From the NCBI RefSeq assembly GCF_031769215.1, contig NW_026782269.1:1-64000 (forward strand): DNA of 64,000 nt. The letters are read 5' to 3'. Origin of the DNA: Ylistrum balloti. Lineage: Eukaryota. Each line of letters opens with the position of its first letter. Within the stretch, counting starts at the first letter, position 1. Shown in pieces: positions 28,897 to 64,000 of this stretch. The notes under the pieces are model-generated. The model saw nothing but the letters and a program-made list of their open reading frames with translations, made no database searches and was not told where the DNA came from. The position numbers were made by a program, and so were the translations under genes.

Positions 28897-29138
28897 NNNN
28901 NNNNNNNNNNNNNNNNNNNNNNNNNNNNNNNNNNNNNNNNNNNNNNNNNNNNNNNNNNNNNNNNNNNNNNNNNNNNNNNNNNNNNNNNNNNNNNNNNNNN
29001 NNNNNNNNNNNNNNNNNNNNNNNNNNNNNNNNNNNNNNNNNNNNNNNNNNNNNNNNNNNNNNNNNNNNNNNNNNNNNNNNNNNNNNNNNNNNNNNNNNNN
29101 NNNNNNNNNNNNNNNNNNNNNNNNNNNNNNNNNNNNNN
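28897..29138. other. Assembly gap (242 N)
   Basis: Run of N. Confidence 1.
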
Positions 29139-44430: not shown

Positions 44431-44729
44431 GGCCATCTTTTTGTGTAACCAAATCAAAACCAAGTTAAGGTCTCCTCAACTCTGAAAGGAGGAACCTCTA
44501 ATGTCCAGGACTCTGTATAAAACAACACTCACAGAAAAATCATTCTGGTAGGGGGAGAAACAGCTTTTTTCTGAGACACTGCTAAAAAAACAATACTTTA
44601 AGACTGTCCCCAAAAATTCAAATACGGCGTGACTTTTGTTGCGCCCCCAAAATAGACCAGGTAATTCAGGTCATCATAGCCTGCTTGCGAACAGATAAAG
44701 GAGACACAAGCAAAGATGATTCCCTGTCA

Positions 44730-45112
44730 TATGTAGGCAACAGATCCGGAGCCATTAGACAACACTCTGATATATGTAGACAGCAGATCTGAGGCCCATA
44801 GACAGCACTCTGACATATGTAGACAACAGATATGGGACCCATAGACAGCACTCTGACATATGTAGACAGCAGATCTGAGGCCCATATACAGCACTCTGAC
44901 ATATGTAGACAACAGATATGGGACCAATAGACAGCACTCTGACATATGTAGACAGCAGATCTGAGGCCCATAGACAGCACTCTGACATATGAAGACAACA
45001 GATATGGGACCAATAGACAGCACTCTGACATATGTAGACAGCAGATCTGAGGCCCATAGACAGCACTCTGACATATGTAGACAACAGATATGGGACCCAT
45101 AGACAGCACCCT
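44730..45112. repeat. 43-bp minisatellite with strict A/B alternation (86-bp higher-order unit)
   Basis: ATAGACAGCACTCTGACATATGTAGAC followed alternately by AGCAGATCTGAGGCCC or AACAGATATGGGACC(C/A). Confidence 0.95.
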
Positions 45113-45659
45113 GTCAAAATAAATTATTCTTTTCCACAATTATCCCACCAGTTGCTTATCCCCGGATCTATGGGACTTTATCTGAAGGCTCTTTTTAAAT
45201 TTGTAAATTAGAAGGGTAGGCAACCCCTCCCCCAGGACTGGTCAAAAGTTACTCACCAAGACATGTATGCGGTGTTGACTACCTATCTGACCGAGAATAC
45301 GGATATACATGCGGGAGTTATTTATACATTTATTGTGACAAATTTTACTTTAGGGAAATTAAGCTAACCAAGCTTTAAGCAACTACAAGTAAACCCTCTA
45401 TGGAATTTTAGTTTTACGCGCAACGGAACCACAGATTCGTGGAAAATACAAGAACCGTTATTTTATGTTGAATGTATGGCAACGGTAAACATAAGCTCGA
45501 ATTAACTTGTATTTCAACAAAGAAAAACAAAGGAACACAGTCATGTAAACATACTTAAGATCATAGACCACAGTAGATAACGGTGAAAAATATCAATTAT
45601 AGCAAAGCATCACAGTTTGACACTATCTGCTGACAACCGAAACCGATGCTATAGGTAGC

Positions 45660-46691: not shown

Positions 46692-46815
46692 ATGGCAGCT
46701 TCCGGGTTTACATTGGAAGCTGTCAGAGAATTTATCGAACAACGGGGCAATAAAGTCACAAATCACGAACTCGTTACAAGATTCAAGGCCGATTTAAATG
46801 ATCCACAATTCAAGG
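46692..46815 (+). CDS. SOWAH: SOWAH exon 1 (MAASG...PQFK, phase-1 end)
   Basis: ATG in AAAATGG context at 46692; donor G|GTAAGT at 46816. Confidence 0.92.
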
Positions 46816-49800
46816 GTAAGTATCCAATTAATGAAAACATGATATTTCTAGCACGTAACCTTCCACGATTACACCTAATTGTCGAAGATATTTCGACTGG
46901 TCGTCCGATTTACACGTTAAGGTATAGATTAAAATAATTTCGATTTATGTATCATACATTGGGACAATTTGTAACCTAAGGATCGGAACTATTGAGACTG
47001 AGTATGGTTGCAGTAATTCCAGCAACAGGCATGAGATCGGATGAGATACTTCCTTAGGTTAGGCATATCAACCCTTCATGGGGCAATAGTCGGGTGTACC
47101 CAATGAAATGTCCTGGGTATCTTTAGCGCCAGACAGTTCATTAAACTGCTGCCTTTCCAGATGGAGTCCACCCTAAGAAGGACCTATAGACTTGGTTCGC
47201 AAGACAACTGAAGCTGGCATTGTTTTGTAAATAGCCATGTTATTTGACTAAACATTAAAAACAGTACTTTTCAGGGTCAGCATATTTCAAAAGTGCCATG
47301 TCATGCCCGAATACATATGCATTTAATATTAATTTCAATCAAATTTACTGAATAAAAACAAATTGAAATGGCCTAAATATGTACATACTCAAATTCAAAT
47401 TAACTGAAGTACAATTTACCAGTTTTTCATAAAATCTTTATATCACTAATTGTCTTATAATTCATGATGAAAAATGGACATATATGCTATGTAATAGAGG
47501 TCATTTTGCCATCTCAATGCCTCCGCTAGGAATCGAACCCGGGACCCCTGGCTTACTAGTCTGACGCTCAACCAATCAAGCTAAAGAGAAGTTCTCTCTA
47601 GCCAAGTGGTATATTGCGGATAGCATTTTACCAGGGTTACATACTCCCCCTCCAGGAAATAACTCGTCCTCGAGTTTCCAGGGGTTACAGCGATGCTGAT
47701 GGGGCATGACTAAGTACTATTCCCAGGTCCCTACATGGGCGCCAGCGTGGGAGAGGTCATTATTTATTTCAATGCTTCCGCTAGGAATCGAACACGGGAC
47801 CCCTGGCTTACTAGTCTGACGCTCAACCAATCGAGCTAAAGAGAAGTTCTCTCTAGCCGAGTGGTATATTGCGGATAGTATTTTACCAGGGTTACATGCT
47901 ATATATATGCCTAGATGTTTCTATGCTTGTAAAATGAAAATTACACTGAAACTGTAAAATTTCTCAAACATGTTTATTGAGGACACAAGATACACGTAGT
48001 TCCTAACAAACTTTTAACACATATATAATATATATTACATGTACAAATAACTACTTGAGAGGTGACAGGTGACACTCGAACTGTACTTATCATTTAGCTG
48101 TGGTCAGTGTCACCAGGTAGATTAGTTAATCTGTAACATATAGAGTTGGGTATGCCCTCAGTAATTGAGTATAGTGTTATCTGTGGACACTGCATCAACT
48201 TAAACAGCATATTTCAATACTCTGTGGTAAGTCAATCAGAACAATTTTTTGCATGTTACTAGACACTGTAGTAAAGTGTATAATACAAAAACAATATAAA
48301 AAAAATATATTGATTAATGAACTGCTGGGCACTTAATGTGTCTCACGCCACTCCCAGGACACTCAATCCTATTAAACTCCATGACAGTTCACTATACTGC
48401 ATTATCATGTGTATACATTATCTTAAAATGTGGATTAAGATATTTTTCAGATGGTCACTCAGAATGATTTTTCACGTGGTGCTAGACATTGGTGTAAAGT
48501 ATATAATACAAAAGGAATTATTAAATGTTATTACTTCTAACTTTGTGTTAAAATAACGTTTTATATCACTAAATTTGTTCTGTACCTAGTACAAAGTGTA
48601 GCCAGTGGCAGAATTTAGTGCAAATGTCAAAGATAGGCCTGAATTTACTTAAGTTCTATTTTTAGCTACAATATAAGCAGTTGATAAAAAAATGGGGGGG
48701 GTGATAAAATTTGTGATTTTCACAAAAAGTGACACAACATAATTAACAACCTTTTGTTTAAAAATGTGTGATAATGCATTGACACATTTTTTGTTTGGAA
48801 ATGTTTAATAGAACTACTTAAAATGACCCTGCATTTGAGTGGCAACTAACTGATTATTCAAAGTGGTAACTATCCCTCAAGTGTAGGGCTATAACACATA
48901 TGAAATGTTGTGCCCAGCCTGTAGATCAACACACTTTTGCTGTTACGACCAAGACTGAAGTACTGGTAAATCTGGCTGTATAGCAAATGTAAACAAATGA
49001 ATCCTGCCTAGTCTTAATTATGGTGTGCATATCAAAATATGGATGGCAAATCTAGTGAGGCGGTGAATCAAACATAGGGCACCTTTTCCACTGAGTTGGT
49101 CGAACTTCATCTGCAATTTAGGTACTTGCATCCCTTTATACTCATCTTCTTTAATTTCACCAAACCTCCTTTGCATAGATAGATCATCTGGAGTGTGTGA
49201 ATGATGCTAAAAAAGAGATTGAACATATATCTATGTACATACAGTAAAGTTGATGTACAGGAGAGGTGTTAGAATAGTTTGAGCTGATTTTGATTTTGAA
49301 GCTGTATGTGGTAGCACTCTCTACTATGGTCGCAGGGAGGACATTCCATTAGACTGTGATTTGGGTAAAGAAGGATGATTTGAAGGCGTAGTTTTTTGCA
49401 GCTATAGATCTGAAATTGAGGTTCTAATGGTGAGATGTAAAATTTCCTAATTTCATTATTAACTACACTGCATATCTTAATTGCTTCTCCCACACATTTC
49501 ACATTCATAGCACAGTACGTTTTTTGCACAAAAACATCCTGCTGAAAGCACACCTGTGGCTTGCATCTTTATTTGTAGACATCACAATGAGTGAATGATG
49601 CCATATTGGATTGGCACACTATAGTGTGTTACTAAAATGTGTACATAGATACTGAAAAATTGCAAAAATGAAATTCCAAGAAATCATCTAAAATTGAGCA
49701 AATATGCAAAAAGTTTGAATTTCACTGACAACCAGAATGTTCCAGGCAACCAGCTTAGCCTACCAAGTTGAAGTGTGTTGTGGTTTTTCCTAATAGATTC

Positions 49801-52800
49801 AGGCAACCAGCTGTAGCCTAAAATGATGTGTGTTATCAGTTAGGTTTCAGGCAACAAACTGTGGCCTACTAAGTTGATGTGTGTGTTGTTCTATCAGCGA
49901 AGTTTTAGGCAACCAGCTATAGCCTACCAAGTTGATATGTGTTGTGTTTTTTAAAAATAGATTTCAGGCAACCAGATGTAGCCTAAGATGATGTGTGTTG
50001 TTAGCAAGGTTTCAGGCAACCAGCTGTGGCCTACCAAATTCAGACAACCAGATGTAGAAGAAAGTAGAATATACTGTTTGGTGACCTGGCTTCAGGAGTT
50101 GCTTCTCTTCTTTTTTCGATTTACAGTGTACATGTATTTTTTTTTTAAATAGGTTACATTCACCTTAATCCCCTTTCAAGATTACAGAGGTCAGATGTTT
50201 GAAAATCTTCAAACAACTTCTCAATAGAATGAAATGCCTAAAGTACTGATATTTTAACTGTATCATGCTGGCTGTGAAGGGATACAAAGTTGATGCAAAT
50301 GTATGACCTTGACCTGCTTTCATGTCACTGAGGTTTTCCATAACTGCATCCCACATTTTAATTCATTCAAACAATGGCACACTTCAGAATCTACATATCT
50401 ACATAACATTTTTCTAATTATCAGATATATGAAAGTTATGAGATTTACTGAAGTATGGGGCTAGTACACCTCCACATCTAGCTTTAGACATTTCTTATTA
50501 CCACTTTGGATGTTCCTTAATCACCTCATATGTTTAACGTTTAGGCCCTTAGCATCACTGACAAGGCCTAGGAGAATAAAACAGCTGTAGCATGCAGTTT
50601 AATTTATTGATTGGCTGTACTATATCTAACTCTAAATTTGTATTGCCTGGTAAATGGTGTTATTCACTTGTGTGTCGTTTGTACAATCTGTATTGATATA
50701 TGACTTCTAAAAAAAGCATAAATGACCTTTACATAGGTTTTTGTTCCACTTAGGAAACAAAGTCAACATGTAATTCAACCATAATCATTATTAACAGTGT
50801 TAAAAGGCTTTGTGGAGCTCATTCTAGACATGAACTGATAGAGGCACTACATACAACACTGAACAGGATCTGTTTGCAAATATGTTTCTCGGAACAAAAT
50901 ATCAAAATTACAATTTGTATATGGTGCTCTTCAGTTTCAAACCCACAAAGGAATAAGCTTGTTTGGATAGCTGTCTTCACCAGAAGTCATTTTGGAAACT
51001 TGCTGTGAACACACACTGTAGAGCAATAATTTGTTCATGGTAGCAACATAACTTTGCAAATGTCAATTGCTCTACTATCTGACGTCAATACACAAAACGT
51101 GTGCATTTCAGAAAAGCTCTGTGGGTTTATATCTCCTACCACATATTCTCATTTATCTTAATAATGTGTGATACTAATTAGGTCTTATACATTCTGCAGA
51201 AAAAAGTTAAAAAAATATATTTCCTATTCCCAATGGCTTTCCCTTCATGCCAGTGTCAGGCAAAAGTAACAGATAAGCAGAAGAAAGAGAACTAAACAAG
51301 CATTGTCATTTTGATTGTCCACACGTTACTCTAGTTAAACGCTGCTGTTTGTTAGCTATAAATACCTTGTCAAGAGAGAATTTCTCTCTGGATTAATCAG
51401 AAAAGCAATATTCTAGTGAGTCAGGAGTTCTGGATCTGATTTCTAGCCGGGATGTAGAAAAATAATGGCTGTTTCATTGGTGCTCAGTATTGTTCATGTA
51501 AGAGAAAAAACTGACAAAAACACTCAACCTTGTTTTGTCTGTTCACTTAACAAGTTTTGTTGCTTGTTGCATATTCTTCCAATTTTTCAGTGTGAAGTAT
51601 TTTGTTCAAGTGAGATATTTCATAGATCTCTCAACAGATTTATTTCATATTTATACCATAGTATCACAACATTAAGGTTTACAGCTTCTAAGATTTTGAT
51701 AGTCATCAGTCAAAGTTAGAGTCAAAAGTCACATGATCACTTTACTTTTATCAAGGGACAGTACTTTTACATTTGTGATAGTGAAGAGTCATGTGAATGA
51801 AGGCTGTTCTTGTAAATGTGATTACCATTTCTTCATGAAGGATTTTCAATTTTCTAAATACAAATAAGCTAAAACAATTAGCTATACCAGGTACATATAT
51901 TCAAAATGGTATTTGCAGATACCTTTGATAGTGTTTATTTCTATTTCAGGTAAAAATCGAGAAAATTTCAAGGATTTTGTAAATACTCTAGCAACTATCA
52001 AAGTAGATGAGGTAAGTACCTTTTTCATATTTCAGTGAATCTTGTAGTATATTTTACTAGGTATTGCGTCTATCAGGGGCCTGTCAGTAGAGGATGTAAC
52101 ACTTGTGTCTATCAGGGGCCTGTCAGTAGAGGATGTAACATTTGTGTCTATCAGGGGCCTGTCAGTAGAGAATGTAACATTTGTGTCTATCAGGGGCCTG
52201 TCAGTAGAGAATGTAACATTTGTGTCTATCAGGGGCCTGTCAGTAGAGAATGTAACATTTGTGTCTATCAGGGGCCTGTCAGTAGAGGATGTAACACTTG
52301 TGTCTATCAGGGGCCTGTCAGTAGAGAATGTAACATTTGTGTCTATCAGGGGCCTGTCAGTAGAGAATGTAACATTTGTGTCTATCAGGGGCCTGTCAGT
52401 ATAGGATGTAACACTTGTGTCTATCAGGGGCCTGTCAGTAGAGTCTATCAGGGGCCTGTCAGTAGAGAATGTAACATTTGTGTCTATCAGGGGCCTGTCA
52501 GTATAGGATGTAACACTTGTGTCTATCAGGGGCCTATCAGTATAGGATATAACCTCTGCCTTTGTTGGTATCAGAGTAACTTGTTAGTATACATTTGACT
52601 CTTTATGATTGTGATTGATATTTCACATCTAACCTGAATTTTCAACAATAAGCCCACGCTGATAATAAGTCCACTTACTGCAGATCAGTCATGTTATTCT
52701 ACTTATGTCCTGTAATAAGGCAACACCCTGATTTTAAGAGTTAATATGTTGATCACCTGGCTTCATTCTTGTCATGCCACAGATAAATGGCATTCATAGC

Positions 52801-55800
52801 AGTGTGTTTGCCACTGTTTTTGTTTTCTTTTTTTTAAATCATGAAATCTTCATAATGGATGTCACAATGACATTTTAATTTTCTTTCTTTTACATTTGGT
52901 TTGTATATTGTGACAAAAAGATCTGTTTTATACATTATCTATGTTCATAACATTATTTTCATGATTAGCCTTACTTCTCTTATACATTTTTTTCATGTTA
53001 ATATCATCCCAATCAGGTTAAACTAAAATGAATTATGGAAGATTCAGGTCTACGTTTGATGTTTTGACCCAGGTTAGTAATACCTGGTTTGAGCCAAACT
53101 TTCATAACAAACAAAAAAAATGTCACTTATACTGATGTTTCCATTTCTTCATCAGAGAGGTGAAAAGGTTTTGGTGCTGAAGAAGAAATTTCGATCCGAT
53201 GCTAAGGAACAGGGTCAGAAGGTCAATGACAACCAGGACCCACGAAATGATATCCGTGCTCACTCTGAGCCTCCAGCAAACCCAGGGGGTTCAGATCAAG
53301 TTGATGGAGGTGGCATGTCTAAAGTACGCAGTGAGACAAATATCACTTCAAGGGAGACAACTCCAGAAATGTCCATGACTAGTAGCGCCAGTATGGGAAC
53401 AATATCTGTATCATCAGCAGCATCGTCCACGGTAAGTATAAACACTTACAGGACTTTGGTCGGAGTATCTTTGGTTATAGAGCATCAGGTAAAATATTCA
53501 ACCTTCATTCCAACAGTACACATATCAAAAGTAAAAATCATGTCTACAAAATTTCTTATCATACTATCCACATTCCCTGGACAACATATATATACATGTA
53601 TATAAAAAGCTCTGACTATCCAATGATATATCTGTGATGACCTGTAAAATATTCAGCCTTGTTTTGTGGTTGTTTGTTAGACAAGGACCTCAAGGACCTC
53701 CTCATCCTTATTCCAAACTTGTGCATTTCAGCACATACCCATTTCAAGAACTCTGACATCGCTTAAAGCAGGAACAAAAACCTTCTGTTGGTTCCTTTTA
53801 ATTTTTACTATTGTACTGTTTGTACTATTTGTACTATGATAAAGGCAAAATGGGGTTCATCTGTTAAGGCCTTTTTACTTTTTAAATAGAGTTCAACTGG
53901 TTTTTTCACTTTTACTGTGACTCCAACATACACCTGAATCTTCCTTTTAAAGATAAATGACTGCCACTGTACAGATTTATATCAAATAACCATGTGTTAT
54001 GTGTTCAAAGTTTAAACACTGACATTGTTTCATGTTGCATATAGTCAGTATGCAGTGCATGTTCATGTTTTAAAGCATGTTTCATGACAATGTTTGTTTT
54101 TAGATTCACACTTTTACATATGGAAATTGTTGTGAGGTTTATGTCACCTAAAGTCCTGACTAGATAGTTGTGATTCTATTGTAGAAACATACCAGTAGTT
54201 GTGTACTTGTCAATATGAGTGAAAGTCTTTTAAGTCTGTTTTGATCTTTAAAACATCCTCAATGTTTGACTGATACCAATAAATACAACTGTAGACATAC
54301 AAACCTGTCTATATCTATTGTGCTGTGCTAACAATCTTGGTTCACAAAGTTCTTTATTGAAATTTCAAAATTAATTCTGTCAATAACTTGTTATCTATTA
54401 TTTTTTTATTCATCATATCTATAAATAGATGATTTAGAATCATCAAAACAACTTAGATTTGACTTCTTTGGATATTAAACCCTTGAAGGGAATATCTTCC
54501 TTTTATTGATGAAAACCTGTATACATTACCCTTGTCCGGTACCAAAACATCTAAACCTGTTTCTTTTTAATTTTCGACATTGATCAATGCACAACTTACC
54601 AGACATTCTGCACCTATAATATAGCACAACATTTACAACACGTAATTATTATTGTATGTTAATACACTGTGTAAGTCTGGTTTGTATATAATTTGCTTAT
54701 TGGGGCAAGTTTAGGGCTTTTTCCGCTGGGAGAGAACATATATAAAGAAGCTGGTGTGTATAGCTTACCAGTATATAATCCAACATTGTATATATGGTAC
54801 ATTTTGTATTCCCATTAAAATTGCAGTTTTTACATAATCAAGGGTGAATAATACAGAAAACGACTAATTACAAGGTACTTCTCATTATGTTTTTAATTCT
54901 ATAGGTAAATAGATAAACACTGCCCCTTTACTTACGATTGTTCTCATCATTTCAGCATTCATGTGAACCTTGTTTGAAGGGTATGTTTACATGAGATTAT
55001 TATGTAGGGGAATTAGAACACAGTATACAGGGATGATACACTTTATAGTGGGAGGAATGGTATACTGTATACAGGGATAGAATACTGTATACAGGGATGG
55101 TATACTGTATAGTGGGAGGAATGGTATACTGTATACAGGGATGGTATACTGTATAGTGGGAGGAATGGTATACTGTATACAGGGATGGTATACTGTATAG
55201 TGGGAGGAATGGTATACTGTATACAGGGATGGTATACTGTATACAGGGATGGTATACTGTATAGTGGGAGGAATGGTATACTGTATACAGGGATGGTATA
55301 CTGTATAGTGGGAGGAATGGTATACTGTATACAGGGATGGTATACTGTATAGTGGGAGGACTGTATGGTATACTGTATACAGGGTATAGTGGGAGAATGG
55401 TATACTGTATACAGGGATGGTATACTGTATAGTGGGAGGAATGGTATACTGTATACAGGGATGGTATACTGTATAGTGGGAGGAATGGTATACTGTATAC
55501 AGGGATAGAATACTGTATACAGGGATGGTATACTGTATAGTGGGAGGAATGGTATACTGTATATAGGGATAGTACACTGTATTTATCGTTAACAATTCAA
55601 GTTAAGGAGAACGTCTTGAAGGGAAATATATGGGACAAGCTGTTTTTCCATCACAACTTCTAATGAAACATCAACTTGTACCATCAGATGTGATGAGTTG
55701 ATCATGATAAGAACCTGTATCTACTTACCTGCCTGACCACTTGTTTATCATACTTAATATTTGTGTGAAATCCTAGAAATTTGCATGCTCCAGATATCAT

Positions 55801-58800
55801 ATTTGGATATGTCATCTGATATTGTATGGTGATCATTGATGACCTTTGGGCGGTTTTGTACCCGTTTGACCTTGCAGGTGTCCAGGGGTTCCCAGCAGTC
55901 CATTGCCTCCAGTACAGACTTGGATGATGTCAATGCCTCAATCATAAGTGTCAAGGACCGTGCCAAACATTTGAATCGCATGGAGACAGAGTCTGAATTA
56001 CAACGAGTCAGCCATCATAAAAAGAAAGACATAAGAGTCAGTTTTATACTAACTGGGGTTTTATCAGAATTTAGAGTTCATCTAAGTAGAACAAAAAATA
56101 TTGTAATCATACTTACTATAATCCTTTCAGAAGATCTCTGACTATTTGTACCAAAGAACTTGTAAATTGCTATATTTTTACCAAAGGAATGAAAAAAAGA
56201 ACTGTTGCTGAGTAGGATAAAAAAAAATCTTGATAAATCAGGTTTAAAATCTACATTTGACTTCATTACATTTTGACAATTTACAGTAATGTGATTCATT
56301 ACTAAGATATGGAGAGAAATTTGTTTATAAACATATAGATGTATGTTACATTACTTTGATGTTTAGGTCTACTCCCAAGTATTATACAAGTACATGGTCT
56401 TTGATAATAGTGACTTTGACTCAATAACCTGTCAGAAAGATGTAGAAACGTACTGGTGACAGTCCTGTAGTTATCAATAGATAGGTAAAGTTGTCAAAGG
56501 TTTCAACATAAATTAGGTAACTTACATAACAGCATGTAGGTTTCACTGCCAGAGACTTGATGATGACAGTGATATTTTAAAACATCTTGTAAGTATTTTA
56601 CAGGAACAAGCATGATTTAATGAAATTGTTTAGGTATAACAACAAAACACATTGTTTGCTTCTTCTTGCTAACTTTAATCAAAGTTCCTTGTTTTGCAAA
56701 ATAACTGCTGCATACAATTGCTTCATTATGATTATAGTTAACATCACAGAACTGGAATCACATTTTTGTTTAAACATTCTCAGTTCCTAGTCTAATAATA
56801 TGATACAGGGTATCGCTGAAGATTAACCTGAGCAGGTTATGCATGGGGAACTGCATGAAGTATTTTACCCTTTGTTGTGATATCAGCAAACTTTCTAACA
56901 TGTGATGGTAGATAGTATTATATATGCCTCTTTACCTAATTTTCTGGTTGGATAATTGATTTATAAATTTAATTATTAAGGTGTCTTCTGTGCCATGATT
57001 CCGATTCAGACTATCCATGAAAAAACAGGATCTTTGAATTGGTCATCAGCTTATTATAAATATTAATAGTCTCTAGGTATAGTTCTGGTATACAATAGCC
57101 TTTATTTACAATTCCAGAGATATTTATAAATGATAATAAATGTCATGTACAAGTAGTTTCTTGGGAATTCCTTTATGAAAAAAATTTATATATCTACTCT
57201 CATTTTTTTTTTTTAAACTGTTGTTGAAAAAGATGCATTTCTATATTTCTATACTCAAACAGATCTATGTTTATCAGAAAACAACGTTGTATCCCCGAGA
57301 CTGAAACACAGATTTAAGCCAAAACTTGTTCATAACATTTTACATGTACTTTTAGTTAGTACAAAGTGATATCCTTATGCATGGCCAATTTTTAAAATTT
57401 TCATTGCTTTTCTATAGAGTTCTAGGTTGAGACACAAAATCTTAAGATCTTTGTATAGTTTACTTACAAAATTAGTTTTTCAGGGTCTAATAATTTATAA
57501 TATTATGAATGAAGTAAGTCAGGTTTTATATGAAATATTTGATTCTTTTTTTTTTTTTTAATTTTTGGATGGGAATACTTGTATACTAACAAAAGACTGG
57601 AGCTTTGTTTCTGTTTTTTGTTATAAGCATGCTTTAACTAAATTAATCAGTTTACTAAATTAAGAAAGTGTTTGTTTTTTTCATTTGTATTGATTTTGCT
57701 TTAACAACTATAAATTTCAGTCACGTGATCGAGAACGAGATGTTGATGAGGACTCCCACTCCTCAGGATCTGCCTATACTTTGGTATGTATGTCAACATG
57801 GTAATTACCTCCCTTTTAAACTGTATGCTGGAATGGAAACTCCATTACAGAAGTTGTTACTTCCCTTTGTTTGTATCTAAAACTTAAATACCTGGGTACA
57901 TGTATATTATAAAAAAAAGTTAGTACAATTCATATATCTGTGAGCTGTTATCTATACATTAAGGAAAGGAGAATGTTTATCTCTTTTTCATTTGGTATTT
58001 GATGATTTTGCATGATTTAGAAAATTATGGAGAAGTTTTTCAATGGTAGTAGTGATCTCATTGAGAAATATTCTGTTTATTTGTGTGATACAAGACATGT
58101 GTGATGCTCATTAGTTTGCCTGTTTATCCCATTGTTATATACCGTGTTCTCATTTGAGAATGTGACATTACTTACATGGATTGACAAAGATTTTCATGGC
58201 GGGTCTTGTCAATGAAGCAAAATATGCTTGCTCTTCTGGAACATCTGGGTTTAGTCTCCTGCTACTTTTTTAAGAGTCTTTGTGTAAATATTTCTTTTGT
58301 CCATATTTTACCTCCTTTTTAATTAATTTTATATTGGGTTATGATTGTGTTCACATAGTTGGAACCTCATGAGCGTGAGTGGTTGGTAGTTTGTGCCTCC
58401 GGAGATTATCATCCCATGCACAAACTCCTCTCCAAGAATCCTGACTTGGTGAGAGTGAGGGTAAGTATTTTACATGCTGTAGTATTAGTGTGTAGGATTG
58501 TGTGTGGAGGCATTCTGTAAATTAGTTGGAGATAAGATTAGTGTTTATGCTAAAGTTTTAAATGCTACTAAAAACTATTTCAGCCACATTACATGAACTT
58601 ACATGGATAAACATACCTACATCCCTGTAAATAACTGCCATTTATCTAGCATGACGATTGGGATAAGATAAATTTGTCATGGTCACACTACCTAAACAAG
58701 AACGATATTAACAACAAAATAAGGACCAGGATTTTTTGTGGGTTTATTAGGTGCTGGTTTATCTGAAACTGACAGACATTTGCATGCCCTGAGATTTTTT

Positions 58801-61800
58801 GTGATTGATGAACTGCATTTGATTGCCCAGAATCAGCCTGCCATAGTTTGTGTTTTGATTTAATATCAATTTTAATGAAAACATTTGACCGTAAATAGGT
58901 GAATTATCACAACATTAGAGCTTGTGATTATGGTCAGCTTTAGATGACCGTGTTTAAACATCAGGTAATTTAATGTCTGTTTTCTTTCTTTTTTCCCTGT
59001 TTCCTGTTCCATCTGAAAGGACTTCACAAATGTAAGTACTGTCTCTTTACCCCCCAACTGTTGATGGATTACCTCCCCAAGTAACAAACATTAGCTGTCA
59101 CTATAACGTCTTAATCTTAACGTGTACTGAAACAACAAAGTTATATGTTTAAAGAGTTATTTCTGAAAGTTTTGGTTATACCTAGTTGTGTAAACCCTTT
59201 CTAGGAACTAGAATTAAAGTCTATACTTCCATGGTGCCTGCTTCACCTCCTCTTTGATGTAGAGTAATGTCTTAAGATAAGTGAAGTGCTGCTTACGCCT
59301 TCCTAGGACTGTCCAAGATTATAACACGTATGGTTTGAGATTGTTACAGCGAAAATGGTACTGAAAATAAAATAAGACATAAAGAGATTGGTGTCTTTTT
59401 ACTGGATACTAGTGTGAATACTCTAAATTTAATCTCCTTCTTTTATTTCTAATATTTTCTCTTGATTCTCTTTTTCATGTCCTACCTCTCCAGGGCGTAA
59501 GTATAACACAGAATGTGATGCTGGCTAATGCCTGTAGTTGGTAAACAGGAGATTTATATGATAAGTCATTGCTTAGTAATGTTTTCTTCAGAGGTAATGT
59601 ATTACTAGTTCACTGTACAAAAAATATTTATTGTATCTGTTAAAAATTTTGATGATATATTTCTCATATTCTGACGGTGTTACCACATACTGTCAATATA
59701 TATATCTTTGTGGTGAACATATTTTAGCACTTTCAACACTCAAAATATTGTAATAAGATATTATTGCTTTCATTGCAGTTTCTGTCTGTTGAATATATAA
59801 CAATTATTGCGGATGTATAAATTTATCGTTGTACCTATTTACCATAAGTTGATACTATTTTATTGTTTACAGTCTCTATATAAGGAGTCTTAATTGATAT
59901 AAACAATTAGATATAGTAAATATAAATACTTTTCATGGTAAAAAATTACTGCCTGTTTTTGTGTGGATGATTTTTTAAAGGAATATTTATCATGTTATTG
60001 TTTCCCTGTCTTGTTGCGGCTGCTGCACTGGTTGGATCCTTCCTCATTAGTATGTAAGTACAGCTGGATGTGTGGTGATTTCATATAGGTGATAATTCTG
60101 TGTTTATGTTCTTGATTTTGATATCATGAATTATCTGTATACTGACCAACTGACTGAACGTTGTCATGTTAATGATGACCTGTACAAATGTTGTCATGTT
60201 GATGATGACCTATACAAATGTTGTCATGTTCATGATGACCTGTACAAATGTTGTCATGTTCATGATGACCTATACAAATGTTGTCATGTTCATGATGACC
60301 TGTACAAATGTTGTCATGTTAATGATGACCTATACAAATGTTGTCATGTTAATGATGACCTGTACAAATGTTGTCATGTTAATGATGACCTATACGAATG
60401 TTGTCATGTTAATGATGACCTATACAAATGTTGTCATGTTAATGATGACCTATACAAATGTTGTCATGTTAATGATGACCTATACGAATGTTGTCATGTT
60501 AATGATGACCTATACAAATGTTGTCATGTTAATGATGACCTATACAAATGTTGTCATGTTAATGATGACCTATACGAATGTTGTCATGTTAATGATGACC
60601 TTTACGAATGTTGTCATGTTAATGATGACCTGTACGAATGTTGTCAAGTTAATGATGACCTATACAAATGTTGTCATGTTCATGATGACCTGTACAAATG
60701 TTGTCATGTTCATGATGACGTATACAAATGTTGTCATGTTCATGATGACCTATACGAATGTTGTCATGTTCATGATTGTCATGTTCATGTTAATGATGAC
60801 CTATACAAATGTTGTCATGTTAATGATGACCTATACAAATGTTGTCATGTTAATGATGACCTATACAAATGTTGTCATGTTAATGATGACCTGTACAAAT
60901 GTTGTCATGTTAATGATGACCTGACCTGTACAAATGTTGTCATGTTAATGATGACCTATACAAATGTTGTCATGTTAATGATGACCTATACGAATGTTGT
61001 CATGTTAATGATGACCTGTACGAATGTTGTCATGTTAATGATGACCTATACAAATGTTGTCATGTTAATGATGACCTGTACAAATGTTGTCATGTTAATG
61101 ATGAGGTATACAAATGTTGTCATGTTCATGATGACCTGTACAAATCACAAGAAACCATCGGAATCATCAAACATTTCATTGCCATTTTCTGGAATTTGGA
61201 AATTCAAAGTTAAGTCTTAAAACATAAAATAGTTCTGAATTTTATTTACAAAAATGTGATGATTATATCGTAGAAGTGATTAAAAGACACTGCTGATTTT
61301 TTAGGGCTATGATATTTGATCACCATGCGTCAGTGACTGTTAACCGATGTGTGTAATTGTGTTGACAGACAGCTGTACATTGGGCTGCTAAACATGGTAA
61401 CCCTGAGGTTCTGAAGCTTGTGTTGGGCAAGACAAACATTGACATCAACAAGAGAACGGTAAATATCTCCTTAATCTTCTGTCCTTTTCTTACACTGGTT
61501 GGTTGACAGGTTTTCCATCTGTTCTGGCAACACATTCTTTCACAGATATTCTTATTTTATATCTCTTTCTTTGGTGACCTCACAAAGCTATGATGTTACC
61601 ATAGAAACAATTGAAACCTTCAGCCAATCACAGTTCTTTTAGGTCATATTACACATGTGAAATTACAATTATGGAATAAGTCTTATTATACTTATAACAG
61701 GGTAGTTACATGATAACTTTATTTTGTAATAACTAGATAATGTATAGTATTTTACAACTGACTTCTGTATTGAATTTTGTCTCCACACTGATAATACATT

Positions 61801-62806
61801 TAATGATTCCTTTCTTTCCATGATCACCTGGATATGCAGAATGTAAGTATAATCTACACACTTTTCTGGCAAACTAGCTATCATTTATATACTTTTTTAG
61901 TGGAAGGAAGGTATCTCAGCTGAACAGACATGTTGCTGTCGGTTAATGTCATGAGTTATTCTGGTGTTGCATTTTTCCTAGGAGTTACTTCCCTTTAATA
62001 GTTCCTGCTTACTTTTGTATTTATGAGTACTTGTGCATAATATGGTTAATTTATGATTCTAAGTAATAAATTTCTGATTTTTATTGTCAGGATACAGTCG
62101 AGTAATGAAGCATGGATGCTTGTTTTTGACTGACCCAACACATATAACCTTAAGATATCAGGGTTTTAAACTGTGATACTTCAGCCTTACAAATATATGT
62201 CAATACGCCCAGCATGTATTTATGTCTGTTTTGTTCTTTTTCCATATGATGATCTTGTTGATGTCTGATCACTTGGCTGTCATGGTTACCATCACTAGGG
62301 GGTGAGTCTACACTGTATATATGATATTTGAAAATCAACCTCCTTGAAATCTGACATGAACAGTGTATCAACGAACAAAGATTTATCATATAAGACTACT
62401 CAAGTATTGAAGATAAAGGTTATCATCATTTCTTATCCACTTTAAAAGATGGCAGACAGTGAAAACTTTAAATATAAGTTCTCCCTAACTAATGATACTT
62501 GGGAAAAAAAGATTGTACATGTTACATATGAGTACTAAAACCAGGTCACAATTCACTATATTACAGGGCTATACACCTCTACATCTCGCCTCGATGCATG
62601 GCCATGAACAGATCATCGAGTTACTAGTCCAGACATTCAGTAAGTAGATCTACAATCACTTCTGTTATATTGATCCGAATACATCCTGATCAGCATTGAT
62701 GAATTTTCTTATTTGTTCCTTCCAGAAGCTGATCCAAACATTCGAGACTTCAGTGGTAAAAAGGCAAAGCAGTATCTACCCAATTCAGCTTCTACGAAGG
62801 CTCAAC
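46692..62806 (+). CDS. SOWAH: SOWAH/sosondowah-family ankyrin-repeat protein, whole spliced CDS span (15 exons; the 3' end may continue to 63015 or beyond the window)
   Basis: Manual GT-AG assembly keeps one open frame: MAASGFTLEAVREFIEQRGNKVTNHELVTRFKADLNDPQFKGKNRENFKDFVNTLATIKVDERGEKVLVLKKK...LEPHEREWL...DFTNGYTAVHWAAKHGNPEVLKLVLGKTNIDINKRTNGGYTPLHLASMHGHEQIIELLVQTFKADPNIRDFSGKKAKQYL. The N-terminal block (V.N.EL..RFK...R..FK.FVN..A..K....K..VL+KK) and the two-ankyrin C-terminal block match SOWAH proteins as I recall them. Confidence 0.93.
47490..47896 (-). mobile_element. 407-bp miniature LTR retrotransposon (TRIM) with tRNA-derived LTRs
   Basis: TG...CA termini (TGTAA/TTACA); 5-bp TSD TGCTA at 47485-89 and 47897-901; direct repeats 47490-47641 and ~47746-47896; PBS TGGCGCCCATGTAGGGAC (minus strand, 47744-47727); PPT GGAGGGGGAG abutting the 3' LTR; 104-bp non-coding interior; A/B boxes in both LTRs. 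Confidence 0.88.
49735..50060. repeat. Degenerate ~45-50-bp minisatellite in SOWAH intron 1
   Basis: TTCAGGCAACCAGCTGTAGCCTACCAAGTTGATGTGTGTTG, ~7 copies. Confidence 0.85.
50543..50605 (+). ncRNA. Decayed solo relative of the hammerhead unit, in SOWAH intron 1
   Basis: GGCCCTTAGCATCACTGACAAGGCCTAGGAGAATAAAACAGCTGTAGCATGCAGTTTAATT: same flanks, CATCA-CTGA and ACAGCTGTA, but the core is mutated. Confidence 0.6.
51950..52011 (+). CDS. SOWAH: SOWAH exon 2 (gKNRENFKDFVNTLATIKVDE)
   Basis: Acceptor TTTCTATTTCAG, donor GAG|GTAAGT; phase 1 matches exon 1; contains the conserved R..FK.FVN motif. Confidence 0.93.
52062..52545. repeat. 39-bp minisatellite in SOWAH intron 2
   Basis: GTGTCTATCAGGGGCCTGTCAGTAGAGAATGTAACATTT, ~12 copies, starting 50 bp after the exon 2 donor. 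Confidence 0.96.
53156..53431 (+). CDS. SOWAH: SOWAH exon 3 (RGEKVLVLKKK...SSAASST)
   Basis: Acceptor TTTCTTCATCAG, donor ACG|GTAAGT; 276 nt, phase 0-0; lies within ORF 53120..53605. Confidence 0.92.
55025..55580. repeat. 20/24-bp compound minisatellite in SOWAH intron 3
   Basis: ATACTGTATACAGGGATGGT alternating with ATACTGTATAGTGGGAGGAATGGT. Confidence 0.95.
55878..56036 (+). CDS. SOWAH: SOWAH exon 4 (VSRGSQQS...SVKDRAKHLNRMETESELQRVSHHKKKDIR)
   Basis: Acceptor CCTTGCAG, donor AGA|GTCAGT; 159 nt, phase 0-0; lies within ORF 55836..56141. Confidence 0.85.
56553..56588 (+). CDS. SOWAH: SOWAH 36-nt cassette exon candidate (RLDDDSDILKHL)
   Basis: TTTCACTGCCAG acceptor and CTT|GTAAGT donor; 12 codons, no stop, phase 0-0. 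No homology support recalled. Confidence 0.65.
57721..57783 (+). CDS. SOWAH: SOWAH exon (SRDRERDVDEDSHSSGSAYTL)
   Basis: Acceptor AAATTTCAG after a T-rich tract, donor TTG|GTATGT; 63 nt, phase 0-0; GC-rich relative to flanks. Confidence 0.85.
58359..58460 (+). CDS. SOWAH: SOWAH exon (LEPHEREWLVVCASGDYHPMHKLLSKNPDLVRVR)
   Basis: Acceptor TTCACATAG, donor AGG|GTAAGT; 102 nt, phase 0-0; matches the LEP.EHEW...LL..DP.L pre-ankyrin motif. Confidence 0.92.
59020..59031 (+). CDS. SOWAH: SOWAH 12-nt microexon (DFTN)
   Basis: A ~35-nt pyrimidine tract, then AAG|GACTTCACAAAT|GTAAGT; supplies the expected DF motif after the basic residue. Confidence 0.9.
59494..59496 (+). CDS. SOWAH: SOWAH 3-nt microexon (GGC = Gly)
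   Basis: TTCTAAT branch-like motif at 59447-59453, a long pyrimidine tract, then CAG|GGC|GTAAGT. Confidence 0.87.
60051..60053 (+). CDS. SOWAH: SOWAH 3-nt microexon (TAT = Tyr)
   Basis: CCTTCCTCATTAG|TAT|GTAAGT; completes G-Y-T-A-x-H. Confidence 0.85.
60158..61145. repeat. 30-bp minisatellite, ~33 copies, in the intron after the Tyr microexon
   Basis: AATGTTGTCATGTTAATGATGACCTATACA. Confidence 0.97.
61369..61458 (+). CDS. SOWAH: SOWAH ankyrin repeat 1 exon (TAVHWAAKHGNPEVLKLVLGKTNIDINKRT)
   Basis: Acceptor GTTGACAG, donor ACG|GTAAAT; 90 nt, phase 0-0; canonical ankyrin T-x-x-H-W-A-A-x-x-G. Confidence 0.95.
61840..61842 (+). CDS. SOWAH: SOWAH 3-nt microexon (AAT = Asn)
   Basis: TTCCTTTCTTTCC...ATATGCAG|AAT|GTAAGT. 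Confidence 0.83.
62299..62301 (+). CDS. SOWAH: SOWAH 3-nt microexon (GGG = Gly)
   Basis: CCATCACTAG|GGG|GTGAGT, with a distal pyrimidine tract at ~62221-62243; yields RTNGGYTPLH. Confidence 0.82.
62567..62639 (+). CDS. SOWAH: SOWAH ankyrin repeat 2 exon (GYTPLHLASMHGHEQIIELLVQTF)
   Basis: Acceptor TATTACAG, donor TCA|GTAAGT; textbook GYTPLHLA..GH...+.LL ankyrin. Confidence 0.95.
62726..62806 (+). CDS. SOWAH: SOWAH exon (kADPNIRDFSGKKAKQYLPNSASTKAQ); may read through to the stop at 63015
   Basis: Acceptor TTCCTTCCAG after an 86-nt intron, phase 1 compatible; matches the A...+RD.SG++A.QYL SOWAH motif; candidate donor AAC|GTAAGC at 62807. Confidence 0.88.
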
Positions 62807-63594
62807 GTAAGCAAATCATTCCTACGGTACCTAACCCTGGCCCAGGGGACATAACCCATGATCTAACAACCTCCGTTACCCTACAAGGGCCGGAGCTCCC
62901 ATCCTCAGCTCGATCCTCTCTGGTCCTTCGCAGATCATCAGGGGTGGAGCCTAATTCCCGACAAAGTCTCCGATCTTCTATACAAATACAGCACCTCAGT
63001 ATGGGTGGCCTATGACTTCCAACCTCCATTGGAATTGTTAATTACATGGATGAGGTTCAGTAGTTCCTAGACCTCTTTGCTCATGACTTTATTTGATAAG
63101 TTTGTTTTCTAAAAGATGGTAATGTTTACAAGAAAAGTTAAACTATAGTTTGCCATCTTAGATTTTAATTTCATCATATTTGATTTTTTTAGTTTTGTAA
63201 GTTTAAGATTTAATCATAACCTTAGACTTGTTGCCCTCGATATTGTTAGTGAGGGGGTAAAGGCACAGCAGACCCTGTTTCTTTGTAAGTGGTTTCAGAG
63301 ACAGGTTGTTACAACGATTCAGTTATGTTACTGAGCTGTATACGCAGACAATGTTTACAAGGCAGCAGACATTATCATTTTTTTCATTGACTCTTTATTT
63401 ACAGCTGTATTTTTTTTCTTTAATTGTTGCTTTTTCCATTTAACTGTATACATGCTGCAAACATATAGGTTATATAGACAAAGTTTGCACAGCAGATGTG
63501 TAAACAAGGTCATCTGTCTGTGCCATTCTAACACATCATATTACTCTTTGCTACAAAGCTTTTAATTTAGCTGTTATTGTTAGGATTGATACAG

Positions 63595-63683
63595 GCATCT
63601 AGAGAGTGTGTGTGTGAGGGAGGGGTATATAGACATCTAGAGAGTGTGTGTCTGTGTGTGAGGGAGGGGGGATATCGACATCT

Positions 63684-63758
<75 letters not shown>

Positions 63759-64000
63759 GAGGGGGGATATAGACATCTAGAGAGAGAGTGTGTGCATGTG
63801 TATATGGGAGGGGGATATAGACATCTAGAGAGAGAGTGTTTGCATGTGTATATGGGAGGGGGATATAGACATCTAGAGAGAGTGTGTGTGTGAGGGAGGG
63901 GGATATCGACATCTAGAGAGAGTGTGTGTGTGTATATGGGAGGGGGGATATAGACATCTAGAGAGAGAGTGTGTGCATGGGTATATGGGAGGGGGATATA
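63595..64000. repeat. (GT)n microsatellite embedded in a ~40-bp GAGGGGGATATAGACATCTAGAGAGAGTGTGTG repeat
   Basis: Directly visible; runs off the window end. Confidence 0.95.

What the first reader, a model, noticed from the sequence alone, without database searches (positions are those of the whole stretch)
59020..62301. Ankyrin beta-hairpins built from four single-codon (3-nt) microexons plus a 12-nt microexon
Seen: two motif gaps in the SOWAH gene are filled exactly, in order and in frame, by tiny segments with canonical splice sites. They are AAG|GACTTCACAAAT|GTAAGT (59020-31, DFTN), CAG|GGC|GTAAGT (59494-96, G), TAG|TAT|GTAAGT (60051-53, Y), CAG|AAT|GTAAGT (61840-42, N) and TAG|GGG|GTGAGT (62299-301, G), separated by introns of 265-1315 nt. 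The spliced product reads VRVR-DFTN-G-Y-TAVHWAAKHG and INKRT-N-G-GYTPLH. Established: SOWAH proteins have D-F-x-x-G-[FY]-T-A-x-H-W-A-A-K and R-[ST]-x-G-G-Y-T-P-L-H at these positions (from recall), ankyrin beta-hairpin loops form part of the binding surface, and vertebrate SOWAH genes are essentially intronless. Inference: two tandem runs of consecutive 3-nt exons exist, which aligners and gene predictors would normally miss. All are phase 0-0, so independent skipping could give up to 32 in-frame isoforms differing by single residues at the binding fingers.
Basis: partly seen in the sequence, partly recalled or inferred. Interest (0 to 1): 0.92.

Follow-up and report, generated by a model that had tools for sequence, protein, structure and literature searches.

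The report
Four single-codon exons in scallop SOWAH
A scallop ankyrin-repeat gene (SOWAH) builds two protein loops from a 12-letter exon and four 3-letter exons; this layout is shared by seven molluscs and largely by flies, where it is already annotated, and automatic gene annotation regularly misses it.

Summary
All five AG-flanked, GTRAGT-followed segments sit at the stated coordinates in the SOWAH gene of the scallop Ylistrum balloti, and they are far beyond chance.

The same ordered islands (12 nt D/N-F-T-N/S, G, Y, then N/H, G) occur in the orthologous introns of six other molluscs. Those introns are otherwise unalignable. A drosophilid has G, Y and a fused 6-nt NG.

A Mytilus transcript contig contains exactly the letters that the Mytilus genomic islands supply. 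Transcript-derived SOWAH proteins carry the residues, while genome-based models of the same taxa lack them.

The residues complete the ankyrin profiles and lie in the two inter-repeat loops of a confident model.

It is not new in kind. D. melanogaster sowah has FlyBase-annotated, RNA-seq-confirmed exons of 12, 3 (GGC), 3 (TAT) and 6 (AACGGG) nt (PMC8042270, Suppl. Table 4). The mollusc version splits the 6-nt exon into two single codons.

No RNA from Ylistrum itself could be examined. The "32 isoforms" idea has no support: every transcript seen includes all pieces, and both glycines are invariant.

A TCATG motif upstream of the microexon acceptors (11/38 versus 0/53 ordinary acceptors) is unexplained. 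Two first-stage notes from other places in this genome raise similar microexon ideas; I did not test them.

The parts
46692..46816 (+). SOWAH exon 1 (MAASGFTLEAVREF..., start of the winged-helix domain), followed by a gtaagt donor
   Evidence: It is 100% identical to residues 1-41 of P0001, the RefSeq 'SOWAHC-like' model of Ylistrum balloti, which carries PF25877 WHD_SOWAH.
58359..58460 (+). Ordinary exon ending ...NPDLVRVR, the last exon before the first microexon run
   Evidence: It aligns to Argopecten at 82%.
59020..59031 (+). 12-nt microexon GACTTCACAAAT (DFTN), aag acceptor, gtaagtac donor
   Evidence: It is present in RefSeq model P0001. Orthologous 12-nt islands occur in 6 other molluscs, with a candidate (DPAS) in Zaprionus. 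The fly counterpart TGCCCTGCAACG is FlyBase-annotated.
59494..59496 (+). 3-nt microexon GGC (Gly, invariant position 48 of alignment A1), cag acceptor, gtaagtat donor
   Evidence: It is conserved as GGN in 7 other loci. Its neighbourhood is one of the few alignable intron pieces against Argopecten. The fly GGC exon is RNA-seq-confirmed.
60051..60053 (+). 3-nt microexon TAT (Tyr), tag acceptor, gtaagtac donor
   Evidence: It is TAT in all 8 loci. The fly TAT exon is RNA-seq-confirmed.
61369..61458 (+). Ordinary exon TAVHWAAKHG...INKRT (helices of ankyrin repeat 1)
61840..61842 (+). 3-nt microexon AAT (Asn), cag acceptor, gtaagtat donor
   Evidence: It is AAT in all six bivalve loci (the window and five others) and CAT (His) in Physella. 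A 20-nt stretch around it matches Sinanodonta at 95%.
62299..62301 (+). 3-nt microexon GGG (Gly, invariant position 81 of A1), tag acceptor, gtgagt donor
   Evidence: It is GGG in all 7 mollusc loci and is fused with Asn into a 6-nt AACGGG exon in flies.
62567..62639 (+). Ordinary exon GYTPLHLASMHGHEQIIELLVQTF (ankyrin repeat 2)
62726..63015 (+). Last coding exon (KADPNIRDFSGKKAKQYL... to the stop codon), followed by the 3' UTR
   Evidence: A relative's transcript contig (run X1) covers 62777-63035 at about 91% identity.
62091..62105 (+). Segment that RefSeq model P0001 uses as its terminal coding exon (DTVE, then stop). It lies inside the intron between the N and G microexons and is most likely an annotation artefact.
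   Evidence: P0001 ends ...INKRTDTVE, and the sequence cag|GATACAGTCGAGTAA is at this position.

Best explanation
These are genuine exons of the SOWAH gene of the scallop Ylistrum balloti, and they are probably included in essentially all transcripts. There is one 12-nt exon and four single-codon exons. Spliced in order, they supply D-F-T-N-G-Y before ankyrin repeat 1 and N-G between repeats 1 and 2. These are the loop ('finger') residues, including the two invariant glycines. The 12-3-3 run dates back at least to the common ancestor of molluscs and insects. The second run is 3+3 in molluscs and a single 6-nt exon in flies. How they are spliced is inferred, not shown. A 3-nt exon is too short to carry acceptor-side and donor-side spliceosome complexes at once. 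Recognition therefore probably rests on near-perfect donors with extended U1 complementarity (GTAAGT, often GTAAGTAT). The neighbouring introns would then be removed one after the other, so that each codon is first fused to a larger exon. A T-run plus TCATG element 17-42 nt upstream of many acceptors may be the branch site or an enhancer for this step.
For: Shown:
- The islands lie at the stated coordinates and exceed chance.
- The same ordered islands are found in Argopecten, Mytilus, Sinanodonta, two further bivalve assemblies and Physella. Zaprionus has G, Y and NG.
- The introns are otherwise unalignable, both to Sinanodonta and to the other scallop, Argopecten.
- The Mytilus transcript contig L005 reads AGG|GACTTCACGAAT|GGT|TAT|ACAGCA and TCT|AAT|GGG|GGATAT. 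Its blastn blocks against the genome locus L004 leave just these letters unplaced. The L004 introns hold them as AG/GTAAGT islands, including the species-specific GGT codon.
- Transcript-derived proteins carry the residues, and genome models of the same taxa lack them.
- The fly exons are FlyBase-annotated and RNA-seq-confirmed.
- The scallop product aligns without gaps to 18 orthologues. Leaving the microexons out opens gaps of 6 and 2 residues exactly there.
- Ankyrin profiles score higher with the residues: Ank_4 66.6 versus 45.7 bits, Ank_5 53.4 versus 35.3 bits.
- In the AlphaFold model (pLDDT 88) the residues lie in loops 42-50 and 69-84. G48 and G81 are invariant.
- Donors: 33 of 38 are GTAAGT and 17 of 38 are GTAAGTAT.
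- TCATG lies upstream of 11 of 38 microexon acceptors and 0 of 53 ordinary acceptors.

Background for the inferred splicing order: steric exclusion of U1 and U2 on microexons, with the downstream intron spliced first (PMC10250204).
Against: - No RNA from Ylistrum was examined. Run X2 turned out to be genomic DNA, and run X1 is a relative's 3' fragment.
- The RefSeq model of this gene joins DFTN directly to TAVHW. That could reflect real skipping and not an aligner failure.
- Some RefSeq insect isoforms contain only G or only Y (Bombus terrestris X2 and X3, D. subobscura, Lucilia), so constitutive inclusion is not proven.
- The splicing order and the role of TCATG are inferences only.
- The motif test used 38 sites that are not fully independent, because the two scallops share alignable flanks.
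Confidence: 0.88

Rival explanations
1. The islands are real exons but are used alternatively. Independent skipping of single codons would give a family of isoforms that differ by one residue in the ankyrin loops.
For: All five pieces are phase 0-0, so skipping keeps the frame. RefSeq isoforms in Bombus terrestris differ as G-only and Y-only. D. subobscura, D. simulans and Lucilia models lack one or both codons. RefSeq's Ylistrum and Mizuhopecten models have DFTN without G and Y.
Against: Every transcript-assembly-derived protein seen, in molluscs and insects, has all the pieces. G48 and G81 are invariant across 18 sequences. The partial models are what short-read aligners produce when they cannot place 3 nt. 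'sowah' appears only in the list of reliable microexons among the 8 supplementary files held for the fly catalogue; this is weak evidence. Removing the residues lowers the ankyrin profile scores.
Confidence: 0.1
2. In Ylistrum the islands are conserved recursive-splicing (ratchet) sites that help remove the introns stepwise. They would leave no letters in the mRNA, so the scallop protein truly lacks GY and NG.
For: The motif (Y)nAG followed within 3 nt by GTAAGT resembles recursive splice sites. The RefSeq model lacks G, Y, N and G.
Against: The codons themselves are conserved (GGN, TAT, AAT or CAT, GGG) and lie in the right order, which a ratchet site does not need. In Mytilus and in the fly the letters are in the mRNA. 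Without them the scallop protein has gaps at two invariant glycines. The introns are short (265-1315 nt) and have no need of ratcheting.
Confidence: 0.02

Closest known systems
Drosophila melanogaster sowah (FBgn0036302) microexons: 12 nt TGCCCTGCAACG, 3 nt GGC, 3 nt TAT, 6 nt AACGGG (FlyBase; PMC8042270, Suppl. Table 4)
   Same: It is the orthologous gene. The exons sit at the same positions in the protein (x-x-x-x, G, Y before TALHWAAKHG; N-G before GYTPLH). The order is the same, the first run has the same 12-3-3 sizes, and the Tyr codon is the same TAT.
   Different: Molluscs split N and G into two separate 3-nt exons, giving four single-codon exons against two in the fly. The 12-nt exon encodes DFTN or DFTS, not CPAT or DPAx. 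The mollusc exons are absent from the seven mollusc genome models listed; three other mollusc models (P0052, P0053, Saccostrea) carry some of the residues.
Animal microexons in general (3-27/30 nt; e.g. the 3-nt exons of Ncam, TnT/up, hth, cytohesin-1 and MAP4K5, found)
   Same: They are very short, frame-preserving, strongly conserved, have strong donors, encode surface-loop residues, and are often missed by aligners.
   Different: Most described cases are single, alternatively spliced and neural. Here there are runs of two or three adjacent ultra-short exons that look constitutive. The UGC motif of SRRM4/eMIC-dependent exons lies next to only a minority of the acceptors.
Plant ultra-short microexons and their misannotation (PMC8831610)
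   Same: They include adjacent microexons (5 + 12 nt in rice), conserved GTRAGT donors, and systematic loss from annotations that damages the predicted protein domains.
   Different: They are in a different kingdom and different genes, and no run of single-codon exons is described there.
Recursive splice sites / RS-exons (PMC6224609, PMC5126111)
   Same: An acceptor is followed almost at once by a consensus donor, and a stepwise splicing logic is plausible.
   Different: Here the 3 nt between the acceptor and the donor are kept in the mRNA and code for conserved residues. The introns are also short.

Membership tests
Microexon (exon of 30 nt or less, retained in mRNA) | Canonical AG acceptor and GT donor directly flanking the segment | tested here: met
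   All five have YAG or AAG acceptors and GTAAGT or GTGAGT donors. Over 8 species, 38 of 38 have AG...GT and 37 of 38 have GTRAGT.
Microexon (exon of 30 nt or less, retained in mRNA) | The letters are present in mature mRNA between the flanking exons | tested here: inconclusive
   This is met in Mytilus (transcript contig L005 against genome L004) and in the fly (RNA-seq). For Ylistrum itself no RNA was available. Only the 12-nt exon appears in its RefSeq model.
Microexon (exon of 30 nt or less, retained in mRNA) | Conservation of the exon in orthologous introns | tested here: met
   7 molluscs and 1 drosophilid have them in the same order with matching codons, in introns that are otherwise unalignable.
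Neural SRRM4/eMIC-dependent microexon programme | UGC motif close to the acceptor, a weak polypyrimidine tract, and neural-specific inclusion | not tested
   TGCAG or TGCACAG occurs at a few of the acceptors (for example Ylistrum N, Sinanodonta G, Zaprionus G and NG). Tissue specificity could not be examined.
SOWAH family (PF25877 winged helix plus two C-terminal ankyrin repeats) | N-terminal WHD_SOWAH domain | tested here: met
   P0001, whose first 41 residues are identical to window exon 1 and whose later residues match the other window exons read here, carries PF25877. The orthologues carry PF25877 plus Ank families.
SOWAH family (PF25877 winged helix plus two C-terminal ankyrin repeats) | Two ankyrin repeats with the motifs D-x-x-x-G-Y-T-A-L-H-W-A-A-K and x-G-G-Y-T-P-L-H | tested here: met
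   The spliced product aligns without gaps to 18 orthologues. The consensus and invariant columns are, and the Pfam Ank hits on the Mytilus orthologue are.
Orthologue of the fly sowah microexon set | Same protein positions and same order of the short exons | tested here: met
   Dmel isoform J reads LVKLQ-CPAT-G-Y-TALHW...ART-NG-GYTPLH. The exon list is, and the Zaprionus genomic islands are.
Orthologue of the fly sowah microexon set | Same exon sizes (12, 3, 3, 6) | tested here: not met
   The first run is identical (12, 3, 3). The second run is 3+3 in all 7 molluscs and 6 in flies. Which state is ancestral could not be tested, because no spider locus could be obtained.
Recursive splice site | No nucleotides retained between the acceptor and the regenerated donor | tested here: not met
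   3 or 12 nt lie between them, and they are retained in Mytilus and fly mRNA.

The most novel reading that the evidence does not exclude
Ultra-short exons of this gene may be recognised through a dedicated upstream element: a T-run followed by UCAUG, 17-42 nt before the acceptor. The element is found at 11 of 38 microexon acceptors and at none of 53 ordinary acceptors of the same genes. It would work together with maximal-strength donors and obligatory ordered splicing. If so, this would be a cis-code for single-codon exons that lets them be predicted genome-wide in molluscs. Other notes on this genome report missing ankyrin hairpin residues and microexon cassettes elsewhere.
Probability: 0.2. 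Interest if true: 0.7.

Novelty: new member of a known kind. Interest (0 to 1): 0.5.

Why it matters
- **How small an exon can be.** A gene with four stand-alone single-codon exons sits at the lower limit of what the spliceosome handles. The 12-3-3 run is shared by molluscs and flies, and the searchable literature does not describe that sharing. It gives a compact natural system for asking how 3-nt exons are recognised and in what order their introns are removed.
- **Annotation errors.** The exons break automated annotation. RefSeq and other models of mollusc SOWAH lack conserved loop residues, end in false exons (Ylistrum, Mizuhopecten), or are split into two genes (Argopecten and an unnamed bivalve assembly). 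Many insect models drop one codon.
- **A simple fix.** Scanning for AG-NNN-GTRAGT in introns that flank truncated repeats recovered every case here with no false positives inside those introns. This could repair such models, and it may apply to other ankyrin genes flagged in this genome.

Tried and rejected
- **Direct RNA evidence in this species.** The look-up of sequencing runs gave two runs. When laid on 61150-63100, X2 proved to be genomic DNA, because one contig spans all the introns. X1 was a relative's contig covering only 62777-63035. There were no joints. I left the 30-bp minisatellite at 60160-61145 out of the laid stretch on purpose, so the first microexon run could not be bridged in any case.
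- **Transcript-derived proteins from scallops.** The search found only three RefSeq models, all defective at this spot.
- **Single-sequence AlphaFold model.** Confidence was too low to use (pLDDT 62). I replaced it with the alignment-based model.
- **Chelicerate outgroup, to polarise 3+3 against 6.** One protein was not on record and the other gene range was too long to fetch. The Mizuhopecten and one Mytilus look-up also returned nothing.
- **TTCAT/TCATG enrichment.** I first measured it against random intronic AGs. That control was too easy, so I repeated it against real acceptors.
- **Chance as an explanation.** Rejected.
- **Recursive-site-only reading.** Rejected, because the codons are conserved and the letters are retained in relatives.
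Full report
**1. What is in the sequence**

The window's + strand carries a SOWAH-type gene.
- Exon 1 is 46692-46816 (MAASGFTLEAVREF...). Further exons lie near 53156-53431 and from 55878 on. The ankyrin part begins at exon 58359-58460.
- Joined in order with exons 58359-58460, 61369-61458, 62567-62639 and 62726-63015, they give one open frame...NPDLVRVR-DFTN-G-Y-TAVHWAAKHGNPEVLKLVLGKTNIDINKRT-N-G-GYTPLHLASMHGHEQIIELLVQTFKADPNIRDFSGKKAKQYL....

**2. More than chance**

- AG-NNN-GTRAGT occurs five times in the whole 64-kb window on both strands. Four of those are the claimed sites, all inside 4.1 kb of two introns. A second-order Markov model expects about 1.5 per strand per 64 kb.
- No other GTRAGT lies on the + strand inside those introns.
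- Over eight orthologous loci, 30 such sites lie inside the two introns and all 30 are the proposed exons. The background rate predicts 1.41, giving P of about 3e-29. That figure does not yet use the codon identities or their order.

**3. Identity of the gene and state of its annotation**

An exhaustive search with exon 1 returned a 300-aa protein, P0001, that is identical over the exon. A later search named it as RefSeq [quoted passage not shown].
- P0001 reads ...VRVRDFTN-TAVHWAAKHG...INKRT-DTVE and then stops. It has the 12-nt exon, omits G and Y, and ends in a 15-nt segment at 62091-62105 that lies inside the intron between the N and G microexons.
- The Mizuhopecten model has DFTN without GY and a different false tail. 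The Argopecten model reads from DFTN into the intron.
- In Argopecten and in assembly GCA_053477285.1 the annotators split the gene into two models at this spot.

**4. Comparative genomics**

I fetched the orthologous loci and scanned them. Each mollusc shows the same ordered set:

| Locus | Species or assembly | 12-nt exon | G | Y | N or H | G |
|---|---|---|---|---|---|---|
| L008 | Argopecten irradians | DFTN 21570 | GGT 21859 | TAT 22262 | AAT 22983 | GGG 23257 |
| L004 | Mytilus galloprovincialis | DFTN 14532 | GGT 15527 | TAT 15922 | AAT 17579 | GGG 18470 |
| L001 | Sinanodonta woodiana | DFTS 17141 | GGG 17778 | TAT 18252 | AAT 23897 | GGG 24312 |
| L002 | GCA_029721355.1 | DFTN 13464 | GGG 14777 | TAT 20352 | AAT 22460 | GGG 23673 |
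| L003 | GCA_053477285.1 | DFTS 17423 | GGT 17595 | TAT 17780 | AAT 18357 | GGG 19942 |
| L006 | Physella acuta (gastropod) | NFTN 11678 | GGG 11920 | TAT 12187 | CAT (His) 12981 | GGG 13361 |

- The His codon in Physella agrees with the "SHGG" seen in gastropod-like transcripts.
- The drosophilid Zaprionus bogoriensis (L007) has cag|GGT|gtaagt at 27990 and tag|TAT|gtaagt at 28978 in a 22-kb intron. It has a candidate 12-nt exon GATCCGGCGTCG (DPAS) at 25550, and a single 6-nt cag|AACGGG|gtaagt at 31888 in the next intron.
- The introns are otherwise unalignable. Against Sinanodonta, only the ordinary exons and a 20-nt stretch around the N exon match.
- Against the fellow scallop Argopecten, only the ordinary exons and the neighbourhoods of the 12-nt and first G exons match.

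**5. Transcript evidence in relatives**

- A Logan contig from run SRR13891808 (L005, 1,764 nt) encodes a complete 496-aa Mytilus-type SOWAH without introns.
- Its blastn blocks against the Mytilus genome locus leave unplaced exactly the letters between ...AAAACAAGG and ACAGCATTG, and between ...AGATCT and GGATATACA.
- Those letters read GACTTCACGAAT-GGT-TAT and AAT-GGG. They match the genomic islands, including the Mytilus-specific GGT glycine codon.
- More broadly, proteins from short contigs whose length is close to that of their coding sequence carry D-[FIL]-x-x-G-[YH] and x-G (P0067, P0064, P0057, P0060, P0063; likewise P0071 and P0124).
- Genome-based models of the same or sister taxa lack precisely these residues: M. 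galloprovincialis P0015 and P0061, Solemya, Nucella, Physella, Babylonia, Lymnaea, Sinanodonta and Potamilus.

**6. What the residues do in the protein**

- The scallop product with the microexons aligns without gaps to 18 full-length mollusc and insect orthologues. Without them, gaps of 6 and 2 residues open at exactly these places.
- Taking Mytilus with the residues (P0067) against without them (P0061), every ankyrin profile scores higher with them. The gain is largest for the two-repeat profiles that span the inter-repeat loop: Ank_4 66.6 versus 45.7 bits, and Ank_5 53.4 versus 35.3 bits.
- In an alignment-based AlphaFold model (pLDDT 88, pTM 0.81), DFTNGY are residues 44-49 inside the loop 42-50 that precedes helix 51-58. 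NG are residues 80-81 inside the loop 69-84 between the repeats.
- The two glycines, each encoded by its own 3-nt exon, are invariant in the alignment.
- DSSP did not assign beta strands there, so "loop" is what the model shows. "Beta-hairpin finger" is the established description of that part of ankyrin repeats.

**7. Is it known?**

- No paper in the library mentions SOWAH together with microexons in its text.
- However, Supplementary Table 4 of the Drosophila microexon catalogue (PMC8042270) lists four sowah (FBgn0036302) exons. All are tagged as FlyBase-annotated and counted as reliably detected by RNA-seq. They are 12 nt TGCCCTGCAACG, 3 nt GGC, 3 nt TAT and 6 nt AACGGG.
- Only ten 3-nt exons are listed for the whole fly genome, and two of them are in sowah.
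- FlyBase isoform J reads LVKLQ-CPAT-G-Y-TALHW...NART-NG-GYTPLH.
- So the scallop exons are orthologues of an annotated fly set. What differs in molluscs is the split of NG into two single codons and the complete failure of current mollusc annotations to capture them.
- I could not determine which state is ancestral, because the spider loci were not obtainable.

**8. How it probably works (inference)**

- The donors are near-maximal. 33 of 38 are GTAAGT and 17 of 38 are GTAAGTAT, the full complement of the U1 5' end. The exonic part of the donor consensus cannot be met because it is the codon itself.
- Published work on microexons argues that U1 and U2 complexes cannot sit on such short exons at the same time, and that the flanking introns are removed in order, often the downstream one first (PMC10250204). 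For 3-nt exons in tandem, an ordered and stepwise fusion seems unavoidable. I have no data on the direction.
- An unplanned observation: TCATG, usually after a T-run, lies 17-42 nt upstream of 11 of 38 microexon acceptors and of none of 53 ordinary acceptors of the same genes (p = 2.5e-5). For TTCAT the counts are 16 of 38 against 4 of 53. It may be the branch site (UUCAU fits yUnAy) or an enhancer. This is unexplained and rests on a modest sample that is only partly independent.

**9. Alternative splicing**

Nothing seen here supports it.
- All transcript-derived sequences contain every piece, and the glycines are invariant.
- Partial RefSeq isoforms (Bombus terrestris G-only and Y-only, D. 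subobscura, D. simulans, Lucilia) look like what short-read aligners produce when they cannot place 3 nt. I cannot exclude that some are real.

**10. Limits**

- No RNA from Ylistrum was examined.
- The conclusion for this species therefore rests on conservation, on the 12-nt exon being present in its RefSeq model, and on transcripts of relatives.
- The claim that vertebrate SOWAH genes are intronless was not tested.

**Verdict**

These are real microexons that are very probably always included. They are ancient, being shared between molluscs and insects, and they are a new member, with a small structural variation, of a set already annotated in the fly. The finding is useful as a model for single-codon exon recognition and as a warning about annotation.

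Noticed in passing
window 60160-61145: A 30-bp minisatellite (33 copies, 92% matches, unit GTTGTCATGTTAATGATGACCTATACAAAT) fills most of the intron between the Y microexon and exon 61369. The Potamilus model P0012 also reads through a tandem repeat in the orthologous intron (GKQDTILAGNLIAMFE repeated), so this intron hosts tandem arrays in two distant bivalves.
   Followed up: partly
microexon acceptors in the window (e.g. 59470-59480, 62270-62280) and in L001-L008: A T-run plus TCATG lies 17-42 nt upstream of microexon acceptors. It occurs at 11 of 38 microexon acceptors and 0 of 53 ordinary acceptors of the same genes (TTCAT: 16 of 38 against 4 of 53). It could be a branch site or a microexon-specific enhancer.
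   Followed up: partly
window 62091-62105: RefSeq's model of this gene ends in a 15-nt 'DTVE-stop' exon inside the intron between the N and G microexons. The Mizuhopecten model has a different false tail at the same place. In Argopecten (L008) and in GCA_053477285.1 (L003) the gene is split into two models there.
   Followed up: partly
P0276 / P0267 (Bombus terrestris isoforms X2 / X3), P0177, P0180, P0191: RefSeq insect isoforms contain only G, only Y, or neither of the two single-codon exons. They could be aligner artefacts or genuine single-codon skipping; this is undecided.
   Followed up: no
P0115 / P0118 (Saccostrea cucullata isoforms X4 / X1): These models read ...VKEFTS-GYTALHLAAMHG.... 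They appear to join the 12-nt exon directly to the exon of repeat 2, which drops the whole of ankyrin repeat 1 in frame (34 codons). This could be a real isoform or an artefact.
   Followed up: no
window 63567-64000: Downstream of the 3' UTR there is a (GT)n microsatellite (63687-63755) embedded in a repeat of about 48 bp (GGGAGGGGGATATAGACATCTAGAGAGAG...) that runs to the end of the window.
   Followed up: no
same genome, other pieces (earlier notes s1-258856, s1-240630): First-stage notes report another ankyrin gene whose exons all lack the same 5 residues, and an array of 26 acceptor-microexon-donor cassettes before an SK-channel exon. Hidden ultra-short exons may be common in this scallop.
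   Followed up: no
window 44666-45139 (- strand), 52035-52598 (+ strand) and 54987-55595 (- strand): Long ORFs made of tandem repeats lie upstream of the gene and in its large introns (e.g. the VYQGPVSRECNIC units at 52035-52598). They are most likely minisatellites and not coding sequence.
   Followed up: no
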